Of a stretch of DNA of 64,000 nt, positions 47,818 through 63,646 are shown in pieces; position 1 is the stretch's first letter; every line of letters begins with the position of its first letter. A program made the position numbers and the translations under genes. Origin of the DNA: Styela clava. Lineage: Eukaryota. Under the pieces are notes generated by a model that saw only the letters and a list, made by a program, of their open reading frames with translations, did no database searches and was not told the DNA's origin. The stretch is from NCBI RefSeq assembly GCF_964204865.1, contig NC_135259.1, positions 20,150,001-20,214,000 of the forward strand, read 5' to 3'.

Positions 47818-50133
47818 GCGAGTGTAGCGATAGGCTGTGGTTCGCCATATAATTGAACTTTCCGAGCAACTTTTCAATCTTTGCGTTACATATACTATTT
47901 TAAATCTTTAGAAACTCAGAAGCAAAGACCTCCAAGCCCAAGAAAGAAAAGTCAAAAGTAAAAGGTGAATGGGTTCTGATCTTTAACTTATTACCTTTGA
48001 ACCTTGAGTGATATTTTTCGATAAACTCAGCACGATGACGTGTCCCTCAAATATAGTTTTTGTTGAAAGCAGTTTCTGTAGAGCAGGGGTTCCCAAACTG
48101 GGGTCCGCCACGATGTGAAAAGACTCTAATCTTAAATGGTTGATTTTAAACAAAAAGCCACTGCATTTTTTTGGTTGATCGTGACAGAAGAATATCCATT
48201 GCTATCAGAAAATGCTATTAAAATGGTTAGACACAGAAATTGAGACGGCATCGTATGTTGTTCCGTCAAAAATAAAATTCAAAAACAAGGGTGCGAAGCT
48301 CAAAAAGTTTGGGAAACCCTGCTGCTGTAACCCAATTTCCTCCATTCGTCTATTCTTGGACTTTTTATTCCGCCTTCAGTAAGCATGAATAGTGCTTTAT
48401 TAATGTAATCTTTAATGGATCCTTAGCCAGTGTTATGCGCAAGCCACAATTCCGCTTTTGTATAGTTCAAGTAGTTTATAATGTGTAATTAAGTAAAAAT
48501 TACAGTGATATGAAGAATTATTATTAATAATAGAGAGAATCCAAAGCAAAATCGCTCCGAAGAACGACAAAATATCTCTTTGGGAAAGACTTGCTCCCCG
48601 GTTGAGATAAACGGTTCAAATGAGATTTGATTGTTTTAGTTTCAAACACGATTCGAAACTAAAAACCACTAATAAGTATAAAATATGGGTTTGAACGTGA
48701 GAAGTCGAACCTCAACGCCAACAACGACTTTAGTAATAAACCTTCGTCGCTCCAGAAGTATGTGTACCAATATGGAGGTAACTAATTTTGTTTGCCTACT
48801 TTACATCAAGCTGTGTAAAGGGACTGAAACCTATGGACAGGGGGTATATTCACTTGGCTAACACAGACAGTCCACAGACATTTACCTCAATGGGTCAATA
48901 GACTTTTGGATAAATAGACTTGTAACAATGCCAACGGCGCCCATGTAGTATGCAAACCAAGATGGCGGTCACCGGAACGTAGATGTGTACCAGGTTAGGG
49001 TTAGGCCATAATTTCAGGTTTAAGTACTGCGGAAGTCACCTCGCTAGTCCACGAACTCGAGATATAAATAAAACAAGGAAAATTGGATTGAAATTATGGC
49101 CTAACCCTTACCTGGTACACATACTACGTTCCGGTGTCCGCCATCTTAGTTCACATACTACGAGAGCGCCATTGTAACTATATTCGTGACAATTCAACTC
49201 TACGTACCGGTATCGGCATTGCGGGATCTCCGCTTTCCCGCCGCGAATATCCTTCCGCTTCGAATTGTGGCCCCTACTCAATCAACTTTGGAAACTACCG
49301 CCCTAAACGAATTGAAATTCATTCCTAAACGACAAACTTTCGTTATAGGTACACCAATACCAGACGCTATAAAACCAATCAAAAGGCAAAAACGTACTTT
49401 GCAATCGTTACTGGATGAGCTTCACAACTCTTACATGGCAGGAAGAAAATCAAAAGCAAATTTTTGTTTGAGCGAGATCAAGAAATTGATGACGTCATCA
49501 AATAGACCCAAAGCAACCGAGGTAAAAAAAATGGCCGAAAAATACATTGATAACCCATCCTATATCAAAGCTGCTATTCTGCTTTCTTGGGCGGCTGAGC
49601 TGCATGTTACGGACTCCGACCCTGATGAGGCTGCACTTGCAATCGCCGATTGCGCTCACATTTATGTTCAAGTCATCGGACATATGATTGATCTCAAAGG
49701 AAAAATGCACACAATAGCCAAAGACTTTGGTGTGGATATCATTCTAAAAATGCTTGGAAATCTACGAGGCATCACATCAGCCGATGTTATGTTTAAATAT
49801 GAAACTCGTACTTTAAGTAACGTAGGTACGTGCCATAATAGGTTAGGTCACAACTCAGATGCGATCAAGTTTTATCGCCAGGGAATGGATTTGTTTGAGA
49901 GAAAATACGAAAGCAAAGCAATGGAGCTTTATGATTATGGTACACTACTACACAACACAGGAGTGGCTCATTCGCATTTAGGAAATAACGCCGAAGCTGA
50001 AAAATACTACCTGGATGCCCTCAAATCATACAAAGCTTCAACAGACTGGAAATACAAGGGCCAGAAAAAGGATTTAATAACAAACACTGAAGAAAAGTTA
50101 AAACGCTTACGCCTGGAGTTTAAAAATGAATGA
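42886..50133 (+). CDS. TPR-like helical-repeat protein, copy A, with N-terminal tandem Tyr-motif exons and a short coiled-coil-like segment (start codon unresolved)
   Basis: Exons 42886-42986, 43633-43737, 44576-44680, 45668-45772, 46348-46443, 47029-47128, 47912-47964, 49349-50133 are AG/GT-bounded and join in one frame (about 482 aa). The last exon has TPR consensus segments TLSNVGTCHNRLGHNSDAIKFYRQGM and TLLHNTGVAHSHLGNNAEAEKYYLDAL. The minimal version from ATG 47067 is 299 aa. Confidence 0.75.
43633..43737 (+). CDS. Repeat exon 1 (KRSDYEDRDFSTHNIAQLTSYEDFSPDGRTTSSE)
   Basis: catttag|...|gtaaaa, 105 nt, phase 1-1. Confidence 0.7.
44576..44680 (+). CDS. Repeat exon 2 (DKRSDYEDRNFSTINIAQLTSYEDFSPDRRTTSSE)
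   Basis: catttag|...|gtaaaa, 105 nt, phase 1-1. Confidence 0.7.
45668..45772 (+). CDS. Repeat exon 3 (KRNDYEDRDCSTINIAQLTSYEDPSPDRRTTSSE)
   Basis: catttag|...|gtaaaa, 105 nt, phase 1-1. Confidence 0.7.
46348..46443 (+). CDS. Repeat exon 4 (DKRSDYEYIDCSTINIAQLTSYEDFSTDRSSK)
   Basis: cattcag|...|gtaaaa, 96 nt (in-frame 9-nt deletion), phase 1-1. Confidence 0.7.
49349..50133 (+). CDS. Terminal TPR exon of copy A
   Basis: Long ORF with acceptor ttcgttatag|GT, about 82% amino-acid identity to the paralog at 61458-62248. Confidence 0.9.
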
Positions 50134-50477
50134 GCTTTATAACAATACCGGCTATGACCGTAATCCAAATTAGACAAGTTATACTCAAGCATAGTGATCT
50201 TTTTATTTAGTCTTCAGGATTAGTTATTTTTATATACTTTTTTGAAACTCTTATTATTTTCGTGGAAATTTCTCCCTGTTGTGACCCTATGATCTTAATG
50301 ATCTAATCTGGAAAATTCTTCTTTCAAGGATGACTGATTGTTTTTGACATATCATCAATGTTTAAAAACAATCCATATAATTCATCACACATCTCGTTAG
50401 ATATCATTTACTACATGCAGAGCCCCGTTTCGAGTGAGCGCTACAAATGTTGCTTAGACGTTATTTTTCTCATTTGC

Positions 50478-61129: not shown

Positions 61130-61457
61130 GCCTAGCGCCAGACTATGATGGCATTGCAGATTGCACGTCCCAGGTTCAAGCCTAAAGCAGATAGTGTAAT
61201 TTAAAGTGTACTTCTCATCTTGAAGAGTTAATTAAAAGAATTATTATACATGATTATAACATTCTAATTTGGGTTGCGGGCTTTGCCAAGACAATCAAAT
61301 GATCAACCTTAGAGTTTAGCATCAATTCCGGCTTGTATTTTCTGGTTCAACAAATATCGTGATCTCGGAATACAAATATAATAAATGAGAGTTTTGAAAT
61401 TTTCATTCATTTGAAAACAGTCACTGTGTCGGGATTTCCCCGGAATTGAACTAAAAT

Positions 61458-63646
61458 TCATTCATCTTTAGAACGCAGGCGTAAGCGCTTCAACAATTCT
61501 TCAGTGATTGTTATTACCTCCTTTTTCTGGCCTTCGTATTCCCAGTCTTTTGAAGCGTTGTATGATGTTAGGGCATCCAGGAAGTATTTTTCAGCTTCGG
61601 TGTAATTTCCTAATATCTTATGAGCCACTCCTGTGTTGTGTAGTAATCCACCATATAAATAGTGCTCCATTGCCTTGCTTTCGTATTTTCTCTCAAACAA
61701 ATCCATCGCTTGGCGATTAAACTTGATCCCATCTAAATCGTGACCTAACCTTAAATGACACGCACCTACGATACATAAAGTACCAGTTTCATATTCAAAC
61801 ATAACCTTGACATCGGCTGATGTGATGCTTCGTAGATTTCCAAGCATTTTTAGAATGATATCCACACCAAAGTCTTTGGCTATTGTGTGCATTTTTCCTC
61901 CGAGATCAATCATATGTCCGATGACTCTATCATAATAGTAAGCGCAATCGTCGATTTTTTGTGCAGCCTTATCTGGGTCGGAGTCCGTAACATGCAGCTC
62001 AGCCGCCCAAGAAAGCAGAATAGCAGCTTTGATATAGGATGAATTATCAATGTATTTATCGGCCATTTTTTTTACCTCGGCTGCTTTGGGTCTATTTGAT
62101 GACGTCATCAATTTCTTGATCTCGCTCAAACAAAAATTTGCTTTTGATTTTCTTCCTGCCATGTAAGAGTTGTGAAGCTCATCCAGTAACGATTGCAAAG
62201 TACGTTCTTGCCTTTTGATTGGTTTTATAGCGTCTGGTGTTGATGTATCTATAACAAAAAGTTTGTCGTTTATAAATTAAATTAAATTCATGAGGGCAGT
62301 GGGTCCAAAGGTTGATTGACCGGGGGCAAAATTAGAATCGGAAGGATAATCGCGGGCCGGGAGAGCGGAGATCCCGCAATGCCGATACCAGTACGTATAA
62401 TCAAGATAACGGTATAGTTGAATTGTCACGAATATAGTTACAATGGCGCTCTCGTAGTAAGGTGACTAAGATGGCGGACACCGGAACGTAGTACGTGTAC
62501 CAGGTTAGGGTTAGGCCATAATTTTAATTCAATTTTCCTTGTTTTAGTTATATTACGCTTTTGTGGACTAGCCAAGTGACTCCCGTAGTATTTATACCTG
62601 AAATTATGGCCTAACCCTAACCTGGTACACATACTACGTTCCGGTGACCGCCATCTTAGCATACTACATGGGTGCCGTTGGCATTGTTACAAGTCTATTT
62701 ATACAAAAGTCTATTGACCCATTGAGGTAAATGTCTGTGGACTGTCTCTGTTAGCCAAGTGAATATACCCCCTGTCCATAGGTTTCAGTGCCTTTACACA
62801 GCTCGTTGTAAAGTAGGCAAACAAAATTAGTTACGTTACGTTGTTGGCGTTGAGGTTCGACTTCTCAAGTTCAAACCATTATCCTATATTTATTAGTGGT
62901 TTTTAGTTTCGAATTGTGTTTAAAACTAAAACAATTAAATCTCATTTGAACCGTTTATCTCAACCGGGTAGCCATTCTTTCCCAAAGAGATATTTTGCCG
63001 TTCTTGGGAGGGATTTTGCTTTGAATTCTCTCTGTTTTTATTAATATTTCTTTTTATCACTATAATCTTTACTTAATTACACTATAAACTACTTGAACTA
63101 TACAAAAACGGGAATACGAATTGCTCATAACACTGGCTAGGGATCCATTAAAATTACATTAATAAAGCACTATTCATGCTTACTGAGGAAGGAATAAAGA
63201 GTCCCAAAATAGACGAAGGAAAGAATTTGCCCTACAGCAGGGTTTCCCAAACTTTTTGGGCCTCGTACCCCTGTTTTTGAATTTTATTTTTGACGGACCA
63301 ACATGCTATGCCTTCTCAATTTCTATGTCTAACCATTTTAAAAGCATTTTCGGACAGCAATGGATATTCTTCTGTCACGATCAACCAAAAAATGCAGTGA
63401 CTTTTTGTTTAAAATCAACCATTAAAGATTAGAGACTTTTCACATCGTTGCGGACCACAGTTTGGGAACCCCTGTTCTAGAGAAACTGCTTTTATCAAAA
63501 ACTATATTTGAGGGACACGCCATCATGCTGAGTTTATCGAAAAATATCACCCAAGGTTCAAAGGTAATAAGTTAAAGATCAGAAGCTATTCACCTTTTAC
63601 TTTTGACTTTTTTTCCTTGGGCTTGGAGGTCGTTGCTTCTGAGTTT
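61458..63646 (-). CDS. TPR-like helical-repeat protein, copy B (inverted paralog; 5' part lies beyond the window)
   Basis: Exons 63594-63646 (NSEATTSKPKEKKSKVK) and 61458-62248 have the same splice sites and phases as copy A. Frame is intact to TGA. Confidence 0.88.

What the first reader, a model, noticed from the sequence alone, without database searches (positions are those of the whole stretch)
49349..62248. TPR paralogs show an excess of amino-acid changes concentrated in the repeat helices
Seen, by manual comparison of about 243 aligned codons: roughly 44 amino-acid-changing codons versus about 9 purely synonymous. Only 3 residues differ in the first 75, then dense clusters appear (LAIADCAHIYVQ vs QKIDDCAYYYDR; RTLSNVGTCHN vs GTLCIVGACHL; AHSH vs AHKI), several with 2-3 changes per codon, while the TPR scaffold residues are kept. 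The pseudogene has a third variant (YEIAECARKYVK) in the first cluster. Established: TPR ligand specificity resides in groove-facing helix residues. Inference: diversifying selection typical of pathogen or allorecognition receptors, possibly with gene conversion homogenising the 5' part.
Basis: partly seen in the sequence, partly recalled or inferred. Interest (0 to 1): 0.75.

Follow-up and report, generated by a model that had tools for sequence, protein, structure and literature searches.

The report
Fast-diverging TPR gene copies, selection unproven
Two young copies of a sea-squirt gene for a peptide-binding repeat protein differ mostly at the likely binding surface, but the changes accumulate at about the neutral rate, so adaptive diversification is plausible and not yet shown.

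Summary
The quoted clusters and the third variant in the fragment are present.

This is not an excess. Gene-wide dN/dS is 1.04 by Nei-Gojobori and 0.95 by maximum likelihood. No region has dN significantly above dS. The exon differs as much as the flanking non-coding DNA, 9.7% against 9.3%.

Both copies keep open frames, and copy A is spliced and probably transcribed.

The changes lie on one face of alternate helices and at canonical TPR ligand-contact positions. They recur at the most variable columns of an independent 15-member sister clade.

Allowing site-to-site rate variation and mosaic trees weakens this to p 0.04-0.16 for the trio and 0.076 jointly.

Diversifying selection is plausible but unproven. 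An immune or allorecognition role has no direct evidence.

The parts
49349..50133 (+). Copy A: last exon of a multi-exon gene. It encodes a domain of about 260 aa made of 11 helices, with TPR-like hairpins, ending at the stop codon 50131-50133. Codons are counted from 49351.
   Evidence: ORF and acceptor ttatag| seen. Pfam TPR_12 E 4.9e-9 at residues 154-228. AlphaFold2 model pLDDT 92.2, pTM 0.87. Contigs of presumed RNA runs begin to fit exactly at 49350 and cover the exon to 50300.
61458..62248 (-). Copy B: the paralogous last exon, convergent with A, including its stop codon. Codons are counted from 62246.
   Evidence: It matches residues 37-301 of P0001, an NCBI protein named uncharacterized protein LOC120345730 [Styela clava], at 99.6%; the one mismatch is at the split codon.
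59980..60264 (-). Truncated gene fragment P, covering residues about 63-155 of the domain. It carries a third variant of the first hypervariable cluster and is cut off on both sides by inverted-repeat (MITE-like) elements.
   Evidence: tblastn, translation, repeat matches.
47827..50152 (+). Duplicated block on the A side. It pairs with 63731-61440 at 86.7% identity and includes about 1.5 kb of intron upstream of the exon.
   Evidence: blastn. Windowed identity. Non-coding part 129 mismatches in 1391 sites with 12 indel events.
61440..63731 (-). Duplicated block on the B side.
49627..49671 (+). Hypervariable cluster 1 (residues 93-107, helix H5).
   Evidence: Eight A/B differences. Sister-clade candidate sites 99, 106, 107, with 111 and 114 just beyond this range. 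Columns with 3 or more states among A, B, C and P0002.
49795..49839 (+). Hypervariable cluster 2 (residues 149-163, helix H7). This is helix A of the first canonical TPR motif, with changes at positions 2, 5, 6, 9 and 12.
   Evidence: Sites 153, 160 and 163 have the highest posteriors.
49933..49992 (+). Hypervariable cluster 3 (residues 195-214, helix H9 and the start of H10). This is helix A of the second TPR motif, with changes at positions 2, 12, 13, 17 and 18.
   Evidence: The register is fixed by the Pfam TPR_1 match, residues 200-225 to profile positions 4-29.
50071..50127 (+). Hypervariable cluster 4 (residues 241-259, last helix H11).
   Evidence: Seven A/B differences. Sites 242 and 245 recur.
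41207..47123 (+). Upstream exons of gene A: 41207-41257, 42884-42985, 43632-43850, 44575-44736, 45667-45834, 46344-46505 and 47025-47123. They encode acidic tyrosine (YED) repeats and a coiled-coil stretch.
   Evidence: tblastn with P0002 and P0003. Presumed RNA contigs lie on 47027-47116. The exon borders were not determined.

Best explanation
A and B are young paralogs. A third intact copy, C, lies on another chromosome, and a truncated fragment P lies between A and B. They belong to a family found so far only in ascidians and greatly expanded here, with at least 95 matching loci in this genome. Family proteins have a disordered N-terminal region carrying short motifs. The A/B/C subfamily also has a short coiled-coil stretch. 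All members have a C-terminal TPR solenoid of about 250 aa that resembles kinesin light chain.

Since duplication the scaffold has stayed under purifying selection: about two thirds of codons, dN/dS about 0.3. A small set of positions has been replaced repeatedly, at or above the neutral rate. These positions lie on one face of alternate helices and include the canonical groove positions 2, 5, 6, 9, 12 and 13.

The likely outcome is that the paralogs bind different peptide ligands.

Shown: the counts, the rates, intact and spliced genes, the position pattern, and its recurrence in an independent clade.

Inferred: that these positions face the groove (from the TPR register, not from coordinates), that they bind a ligand, and that the replacements were driven by selection and not merely tolerated.
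For: Both copies look functional despite neutral-level divergence. The chance of no stop codon after 76 random substitutions is 0.035. There is 1 in-frame indel against about 6.7 events expected from the flank rate of 12 in 1391 bp. Contigs of two presumed RNA runs from two studies cover the exons but not most of the intron, and start to fit at the acceptor. B is an annotated protein.

Site classes: trio M1a -1746.774 against M2a -1735.320 (p 1e-5). Trio 3' part alone, 2dlnL 20.5. Sister clade of 15: M1a/M2a 40.8, M7/M8 68.9, M8a/M8 41.4. Joint analysis of 25 sequences: 73.6, and 13.6 (p 0.0011) with gamma rate variation. The code reproduced the IQ-TREE GY+F3X4 lnL of -6164.447.

Nine of 16 sister-clade candidate columns also differ between A and B, against 2.97 expected (p 5e-4). 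For posterior above 0.95 it is 8 of 11 (p 9e-5).

At those 11 columns the trio has dN/dS 7.4 (p 0.051).

Groove positions hold 8 of 18 differences (p 0.0015), and helix-face concentration has p<1e-4.

Adjacent mismatches are in excess only in the exon: 21 against 7.4 expected (p<2e-4), compared with 16 against 11.9 in the flank. They are mostly within codons, 18 against 3.

Changes lie on both lineages: A has 33 non-synonymous and 6 synonymous, B has 23 and 6.

The fold resembles peptide-binding TPR domains of kinesin light chain, LGN/Pins and Rap.
Against: Gene-wide dN/dS is not above 1: 1.04 and 0.95, and dN/dS = 1 is not rejected (2dlnL 0.06).

With site-rate variation the tests weaken: trio p 0.041, trio 3' part p 0.16, sister clade p 0.075. 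A one-ratio model with dN/dS 1.0 and gamma rates fits the trio almost as well as M2a (-1737.99 against -1735.32).

With segment-specific trees the joint test gives p 0.076 and the selected class falls to 1.65.

Taken as a class, the 47 A/B-different columns have dN/dS 0.68 in the sister clade, which is below 1 (p 0.02).

Branch lengths were fixed up to one scale factor. Posteriors are naive empirical Bayes. Only three intact close copies exist.

No ligand, no solvent accessibility from coordinates, and no population data beyond two non-synonymous variants and one in-frame indel.
Confidence: 0.5

Rival explanations
1. Relaxed constraint only. After duplication the exposed binding-face positions became free to drift (dN/dS = 1) while the scaffold stayed constrained. 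There is no adaptive diversification. The significant M2a/M8 tests are artefacts of unmodelled site-to-site rate variation.
For: Gene-wide dN/dS is 0.95-1.04. Exon divergence equals flank divergence, 9.7% against 9.3%. M1a+G is nearly as good as M2a+G: 2dlnL 6.4, 3.7, 5.2 and 5.15. The sister clade has dN/dS 0.68 at the A/B-different columns. Inflation of such tests by synonymous rate variation is reported in PMC7403620 (title and start of abstract seen).
Against: Point estimates for the extra class stay above 1 in every model, from 1.65 to 8. The joint test with rate variation and single trees gives p 0.0011. The trio has dN/dS 7.4 at 11 columns chosen in another clade (p 0.051). Mismatches run 31/25/20 by codon position, and adjacent pairs are codon-phased. 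Twenty-seven columns have 3 or more states among four close copies.
Confidence: 0.33
2. Mosaic gene conversion. Short tracts exchanged among family members created the dense multi-base clusters and homogenised the 5' part. On this reading the pattern reflects recombination and not point substitution under selection.
For: dS between A and B is 0.034 in codons 1-92 against 0.143 in 93-262, while dS to C is similar in both parts (0.19 against 0.22-0.25). Segment trees of the sister clade differ in topology and raise lnL by about 152 units. P0002 matches A only, B only or C only at 7, 6 and 13 interleaved sites.
Against: The genome holds only four DNA-level matches to A's variable half: A itself, B at 86%, C at 82% and P at 78%. 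No other donor exists in this assembly. A-specific and B-specific changes interleave with no long single-lineage tracts. Many states are unique to one copy: 12 sites where P0002 matches none of the three. Clustering of adjacent mismatches is absent from the co-duplicated intron. The 5'/3' contrast rests on few synonymous changes.
Confidence: 0.12
3. One of the two copies is a decaying pseudogene that happens still to be open, which would explain dN/dS near 1.
For: dN/dS is about 1. A truncated fragment lies next door. P0002 from an earlier annotation has no exact locus in this assembly, which suggests turnover.
Against: The chance of no stop is 0.035, and only one in-frame indel is seen against about 6.7 expected. 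Changes are spread over both lineages. A is covered by presumed RNA contigs that start at the acceptor. B is an annotated protein. The N-terminal 92 codons are conserved.
Confidence: 0.05

Closest known systems
Kinesin light chain TPR domain (KLC1/KLC2), and LGN/Pins and Rap TPR domains
   Same: These are the best structural neighbours of the AlphaFold2 model: 7ai4_A E 7.5e-5 with TM 0.53, plus 6f9i, 4a1s and 8rsu. Pfam matches are TPR_12 and TPR_10. All are helical-hairpin solenoids that hold peptides in the concave groove.
   Different: Sequence identity is only 12-18% and TM about 0.5. Only residues 154-228 match Pfam TPR models, and helices H1-H6 match none. There is no kinesin-binding heptad region. 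The family was found only in ascidians.
Hypervariable ligand-contact positions of TPR motifs (Magliery and Regan 2005, PMC1261162)
   Same: The paper names positions 2, 5, 9, 12, 13, 33 and 34 as the most variable and as lying on the concave face. It reports that HOP uses positions 2, 5, 6, 9, 12 and 13 to bind its ligands (passages read). Here 8 of 18 A/B differences in the two canonical motifs are at 2, 5, 6, 9, 12 or 13.
   Different: That study compared unrelated TPRs across all proteins. Here the variation is between paralogs about 10% diverged. Positions 33 and 34 do not vary here.
Fast-evolving TPR exons of NB-ARC-TPR candidate receptors in the brown alga Ectocarpus (PMC3341825)
   Same: These are clustered, rapidly duplicating genes with TPR modules. 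PAML site models M2, M3 and M8 are favoured, and some classes have dN/dS close to 1 that the authors say may be neutral (passages read).
   Different: Those proteins carry an NB-ARC domain and shuffle repeated 42-aa TPR exons. Here the whole TPR domain is one exon, no NB-ARC was found, and the N-terminus is disordered with short motifs.

Membership tests
TPR superfamily (Pfam TPR_12 / TPR_10 / TPR_1) | Match to a Pfam TPR model above the curated cut-off | tested here: met
   Copy A: TPR_12 36.7 bits (cut-off 30.1), TPR_10 30.8 (27.5), TPR_2 28.6 (27). Copy B falls below the cut-offs: TPR_12 20.9 bits, E 4.3e-4.
TPR superfamily (Pfam TPR_12 / TPR_10 / TPR_1) | Solenoid of antiparallel helical hairpins | tested here: met
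   The AlphaFold2 model has 11 helices, pLDDT 92.2 and pTM 0.87. Foldseek's top hits are all TPR domains.
Kinesin light chain family | Sequence-level homology to KLC, with an N-terminal heptad repeat that binds kinesin heavy chain | tested here: not met
   Only structural similarity was found, at 15-17% identity. Proteins named by their sources are all 'uncharacterized'. The heptad-repeat feature is recalled from general knowledge, and no KLC sequence search was run.
Genes under diversifying selection (site-model criterion) | Likelihood-ratio test M1a/M2a or M7/M8 significant, with a class of dN/dS above 1 | tested here: met
   Trio 2dlnL 22.9. Sister clade 40.8 and 68.9. Joint 73.6.
Genes under diversifying selection (site-model criterion) | The same test remains significant when synonymous or site-rate variation and recombination are modelled | tested here: inconclusive
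   p 0.041 and 0.16 for the trio, 0.075 for the sister clade, 0.0011 jointly with single trees and 0.076 jointly with segment trees.
Genes under diversifying selection (site-model criterion) | Gene-wide or pairwise dN significantly above dS | tested here: not met
   dN/dS 1.04, 0.72 and 0.72 for the three pairs. All Fisher p values are at least 0.11.
NLR-type / NB-ARC-TPR immune receptors | NACHT or NB-ARC nucleotide-binding domain on the same protein | tested here: not met
   Pfam finds only TPR families in P0002, P0004, P0007, P0077, P0083 and P0146, and nothing in P0069. Gene A's upstream exons match the N-terminal stretches of P0002/P0003 that hold the YED repeats and a coiled-coil-looking stretch.
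Allorecognition or secreted/membrane receptors | Signal peptide or transmembrane segment, and extreme allelic polymorphism | tested here: inconclusive
   The N-termini of P0001, P0002 and P0004-P0015 were read by eye and show no hydrophobic leader. No predictor was run. Polymorphism seen in 4 contig sets was two non-synonymous variants and one 6-bp in-frame indel, with 33 rows not shown.

The most novel reading that the evidence does not exclude
The family is an ascidian-specific intracellular recognition repertoire of about a hundred genes. Each gene joins a hypervariable TPR groove, diversified by selection and by mosaic exchange between paralogs, to a disordered N-terminal tail of signalling or trafficking motifs: tyrosine YED repeats, PSAP and PPPY. 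It would work as a sensor-adaptor set for variable peptide ligands, for example from pathogens. That would make it functionally analogous to IFIT or NLR-TPR systems but built on a different architecture.
Probability: 0.15. Interest if true: 0.75.

Novelty: new member of a known kind. Interest (0 to 1): 0.4.

Why it matters
If diversification of the groove is adaptive, this would be an undescribed, lineage-specific recognition family in the sister group of vertebrates. It would offer a clear handle, about 10-25 hypervariable positions, for finding its ligands.

If it is only relaxed constraint, it is an ordinary young gene family. In that case it is a useful caution. A raw count of 44 replacement against 9 silent codons is what neutrality predicts. 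Standard M7/M8 tests were highly significant here, yet most of that support disappeared once rate variation and mosaicism were modelled.

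Tried and rejected
Whole-gene and regional dN>dS tests gave nothing significant.

A multi-nucleotide mutation process general to the duplicated block was rejected as the cause of the clusters. The co-duplicated intron shows no excess of adjacent mismatches (16 against 11.9 expected, p 0.13).

A donor paralog for conversion was sought in the whole assembly. 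Only A, B, C and P match at DNA level.

Pseudogene status of A or B was rejected on open-frame, indel, lineage and RNA evidence.

The search for homologous proteins returned only 3 proteins, because it is limited by shared words and by length. The profile search reached further, but most of its 38963 hits are generic TPR matches to profile positions 150-228.

The protein atlas gave only generic TPR clusters.

Surface exposure could therefore not be computed and was inferred from the TPR register and helix periodicity.

A McDonald-Kreitman test was not possible. The contig sets showed too few exon variants, and 33 rows were not displayed.

Literature: a search for 'Styela clava' with 'tetratricopeptide' found 3 papers, of which 2 were listed, and by their titles and abstract starts neither concerns this family. 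The S. clava genome paper PMC7540406 has no 'TPR' in its main text. Its Tables S8 and S9, on expanded and positively selected genes, are supplements and could not be read, so they may bear on novelty. No search was made for the Ciona or Clavelina homologues by name.

Full report
ANATOMY

The window is part of a 377-Mb eukaryotic assembly (G000, contig C13) with about 35% G+C.

Copy A is an open frame whose homology-supported part starts at a splice acceptor (ttatag|G at 49348/49349) and ends at the stop codon 50131-50133 on the + strand. Copy B is its counterpart at 62248-61458 on the - strand, so the two genes converge. A truncated fragment P lies between them at about 60264-59980 on the - strand. 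It covers residues 63-155 only and is bounded by inverted-repeat elements.

The duplicated block is larger than the exon: 47827-50152 pairs with 63731-61440 at 86.7% identity. A third intact close copy, C, lies on contig C4 (locus L003), with 73% amino-acid identity to A.

The translation of B equals residues 37-301 of an NCBI protein named 'uncharacterized protein LOC120345730 [Styela clava]' (P0001), apart from the split codon. This names the organism and confirms that the acceptor is used.

Upstream exons of gene A were located by tblastn with two related proteins, P0002 and P0003, at 41207-47123. By eye, the matching parts of those proteins (sequences) hold acidic tyrosine (YED) repeats and a coiled-coil-looking stretch.

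Contigs of two presumed RNA runs from two studies (X2, X6) lie on 47027-47116 and on 49350-50300. They leave most of the intron uncovered, apart from repeat-rich bins and one small contig of X2 at 47912-48133 with 7 differences. They begin to fit exactly at 49350, with 57 and 96 unaligned bases in front. That these runs are RNA is the tool's guess.

CHECK OF THE OBSERVATION

Over 260 aligned codons, A and B have 204 identical, 9 synonymous-only and 47 amino-acid-changing codons. Sixteen of the 47 have two or three changed bases. The quoted peptide clusters and the fragment's third variant are all present.

The word 'excess' does not hold. There are 3.77 non-synonymous sites for each synonymous site, and the estimated changes are 60.5 against 15.5, a ratio of 3.9:1. 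This gives dN 0.105, dS 0.101 and dN/dS 1.04. A-C and B-C both give 0.72. Maximum likelihood on the trio gives 0.95, and dN/dS = 1 is not rejected (2dlnL 0.06).

No region has dN significantly above dS. The best post-hoc window, codons 93-146, gives 4.2 with p 0.11.

The exon differs by 76 of 780 bases (9.7%). The co-duplicated intron differs by 129 of 1391 (9.3%). Mismatches by codon position are 31, 25 and 20.

ARE THE COPIES ALIVE?

After 76 random substitutions with the observed transition share, only 3.5% of simulated copies keep an open frame. After 155 substitutions (the A, B, C tree) the figure is 0.11%.

The intron carries 12 indel events in 1391 bp, which predicts about 6.7 in the exon. 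One is seen, of 6 bp and in frame. That same indel site is polymorphic: a GCCGAT insertion behind 49779 appears in runs X2 and X4.

Polarising with C puts 33 non-synonymous and 6 synonymous changes on A, and 23 and 6 on B, with 8 ambiguous. They are interleaved along the gene. Both copies are therefore maintained, and both have changed.

WHERE THE CHANGES ARE

An AlphaFold2 model built from a 29-member family alignment is confident (pLDDT 92.2, pTM 0.87). It shows 11 helices. Its nearest solved folds are the TPR domains of kinesin light chain, LGN/Pins and phage Rap, with E about 1e-4 and TM about 0.5.

Helices and loops are equally affected: 37 of 206 residues against 10 of 54. However, H1, H2, H4 and H6 have no change, while H5, H7, H9 and H11 have 25 of 81, against 10 of 83 in the even helices (p 0.004). 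Within helices the changes sit on one face (combined permutation p<1e-4).

In the two canonical TPR motifs the register is fixed by the Pfam TPR_1 match and by internal repeat similarity. There, 8 of 18 differences fall on positions 2, 5, 6, 9, 12 and 13, against 3.2 expected (p 0.0015). A published analysis gives these as the concave-face, ligand-contacting positions (PMC1261162, passages read).

THE FAMILY

The genome holds at least 95 matches to the exon, mostly at 22-40% identity. Many sit in tandem clusters, for example on C3 at 25.17-25.32 Mb, on C16 at 0.96-1.08 Mb and on C10 at 10.20 Mb.

A profile search of 1.84 billion proteins found full-domain matches. Ten of them were looked up: eight are 'uncharacterized' S. 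clava proteins, one is from Ciona intestinalis (1277 aa) and one from Clavelina lepadiformis. Pfam sees only TPR models in seven proteins scanned.

The N-termini are disordered and carry YED tyrosine motifs in several subfamilies. In the C10 subfamily they carry PSAP and PPPY.

Pairwise dN/dS among recent pairs ranges from 0.29 (C10) to 1.13.

SITE MODELS

PAML and HyPhy are not installed. I wrote Goldman-Yang site models with F3x4 frequencies. Branch lengths were taken from IQ-TREE and rescaled by one factor. The code reproduces IQ-TREE's lnL of -6164.447.

- Trio: M1a -1746.774 against M2a -1735.320 (2dlnL 22.9, p 1e-5; dN/dS 8.1 in 12.5% of codons). M7/M8 gives 22.9 and M8a/M8 gives 22.8.
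- The 3' 170 codons alone, with their own branch lengths, give 20.5.
- An independent sister clade of 15 paralogs gives M1a/M2a 40.8, M7/M8 68.9 and M8a/M8 41.4, with dN/dS 2.5-3.1 in 6-9% of codons.

Of its 16 candidate columns, 9 also differ between A and B, against 2.97 expected (p 5e-4). Of the 11 with posterior above 0.95, 8 do (p 9e-5).

ROBUSTNESS

I then allowed gamma-distributed site rates that scale dS and dN together, the remedy argued for in PMC7403620 (only title and start of abstract seen).

- The trio falls to 2dlnL 6.4 (p 0.041) and its 3' part to 3.7 (p 0.16). A one-ratio model with dN/dS 1.0 and alpha 0.53 reaches -1737.99.
- The sister clade falls to 5.2 (p 0.075).
- Cross-validation: the sister clade has dN/dS 0.68 at the 47 A/B-different columns, which is below 1 (p 0.02), against 0.42 elsewhere. 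The trio has 3.0 at the 16 sister-clade candidate columns (p 0.155) and 7.4 at the best 11 (p 0.051).
- Joint analysis of four clades (25 sequences), with one site class per column: 73.6 without and 13.6 (p 0.0011; dN/dS 2.2 in 8.3%) with rate variation.
- Segment trees of the sister clade differ in topology and raise lnL by about 152 units, which indicates mosaic paralogs. With these trees the joint tests give 45.9 and 5.15 (p 0.076; dN/dS 1.65 in 10.6%). The top columns are 106, 153, 160, 163, 205, 214 and 245.

GENE CONVERSION

dS between A and B is 0.034 in codons 1-92 and 0.143 in 93-262, while dS to C is similar in both parts. This suggests homogenisation of the 5' part but rests on 2 against 13.5 synonymous changes.

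A's variable half has only four DNA-level matches in the assembly: A, B, C and P. No extant donor explains its private states.

P0002 comes from an earlier annotation and has no exact locus here. It shares states with A only, B only, C only or none at 7, 6, 13 and 12 sites, interleaved. Twenty-seven columns have three or more states among A, B, C and P0002.

Adjacent mismatches are in excess in the exon (21 against 7.4 expected) but not in the intron (16 against 11.9). They are mostly within codons, 18 against 3 (p 0.046). This argues against a phase-blind mutational or conversion process, though only weakly.

VERDICT

The spatial pattern is non-random and fits the ligand face of a TPR solenoid.

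Standard tests support diversifying selection. Tests that model rate variation and mosaicism leave it marginal. I put adaptive diversification of the binding face at about 0.5, pure relaxation at about 0.33, conversion-driven patterning at about 0.12 and a dying copy at about 0.05.

Nothing here shows an immune or allorecognition role.

Other first-stage notes on this genome describe varied motif-bearing N-terminal exons on TPR-like proteins. I saw the YED and PSAP/PPPY motifs myself but did not test their function.

Noticed in passing
window 48932-49174, 62441-62680, 59672-59875, 60253-60500, and many more copies (e.g. 28628-28851, 43192-43367, 9380-9552): An element of about 240 bp with long inverted-repeat arms, MITE-like. 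It sits just upstream of the TPR exon in both A and B and flanks the truncated fragment P on both sides. Contig depth over it in all four runs is thousands of times higher than in the neighbouring sequence.
   Followed up: partly
window 50444-51252: A tandem array of units of about 135 bp just downstream of copy A, with related copies at 59445-59671 next to the fragment P.
   Followed up: no
window 41207-47123; proteins P0002, P0003, P0013-P0015: The N-terminal exons encode repeated acidic tyrosine motifs of the type x-Y-E-D-x-x-F. Similar YED motifs occur in distant subfamilies. P0008, of the C10 subfamily, instead carries PSAP and PPPY. The TPR domain therefore seems to be combined with varied short-motif tails.
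   Followed up: partly
window 49779/49780, 49678, 49813: Variants of copy A seen in other contig sets: an in-frame GCCGAT insertion at the very site of the A/B indel (X2, X4), G>A at 49678 (G110R; X2, X1) and T>A at 49813 (L155I; X4, X1). Both listed exon substitutions change the amino acid. Thirty-three further rows were not displayed.
   Followed up: partly
protein P0002 (LOC120337191, earlier S. clava annotation): A fourth close paralog or allele, 77-80% identical to A and B, has no exact locus in this assembly; the best match is 80%. This suggests presence/absence or strong allelic variation between individuals.
   Followed up: partly
G000 C3 25.17-25.32 Mb (loci L005, L007-L011, L015, L016): A tandem cluster of at least eight family members whose segment trees disagree. 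For example L005 pairs with L011 in the middle third, but L011 pairs with L009 in the last third. These are mosaic paralogs.
   Followed up: partly
locus L027 (G000 C3:23473805-23474788); protein P0004: One family member carries an extra C-terminal TPR pair, an internal duplication of the last two motifs. This lengthens the solenoid.
   Followed up: no
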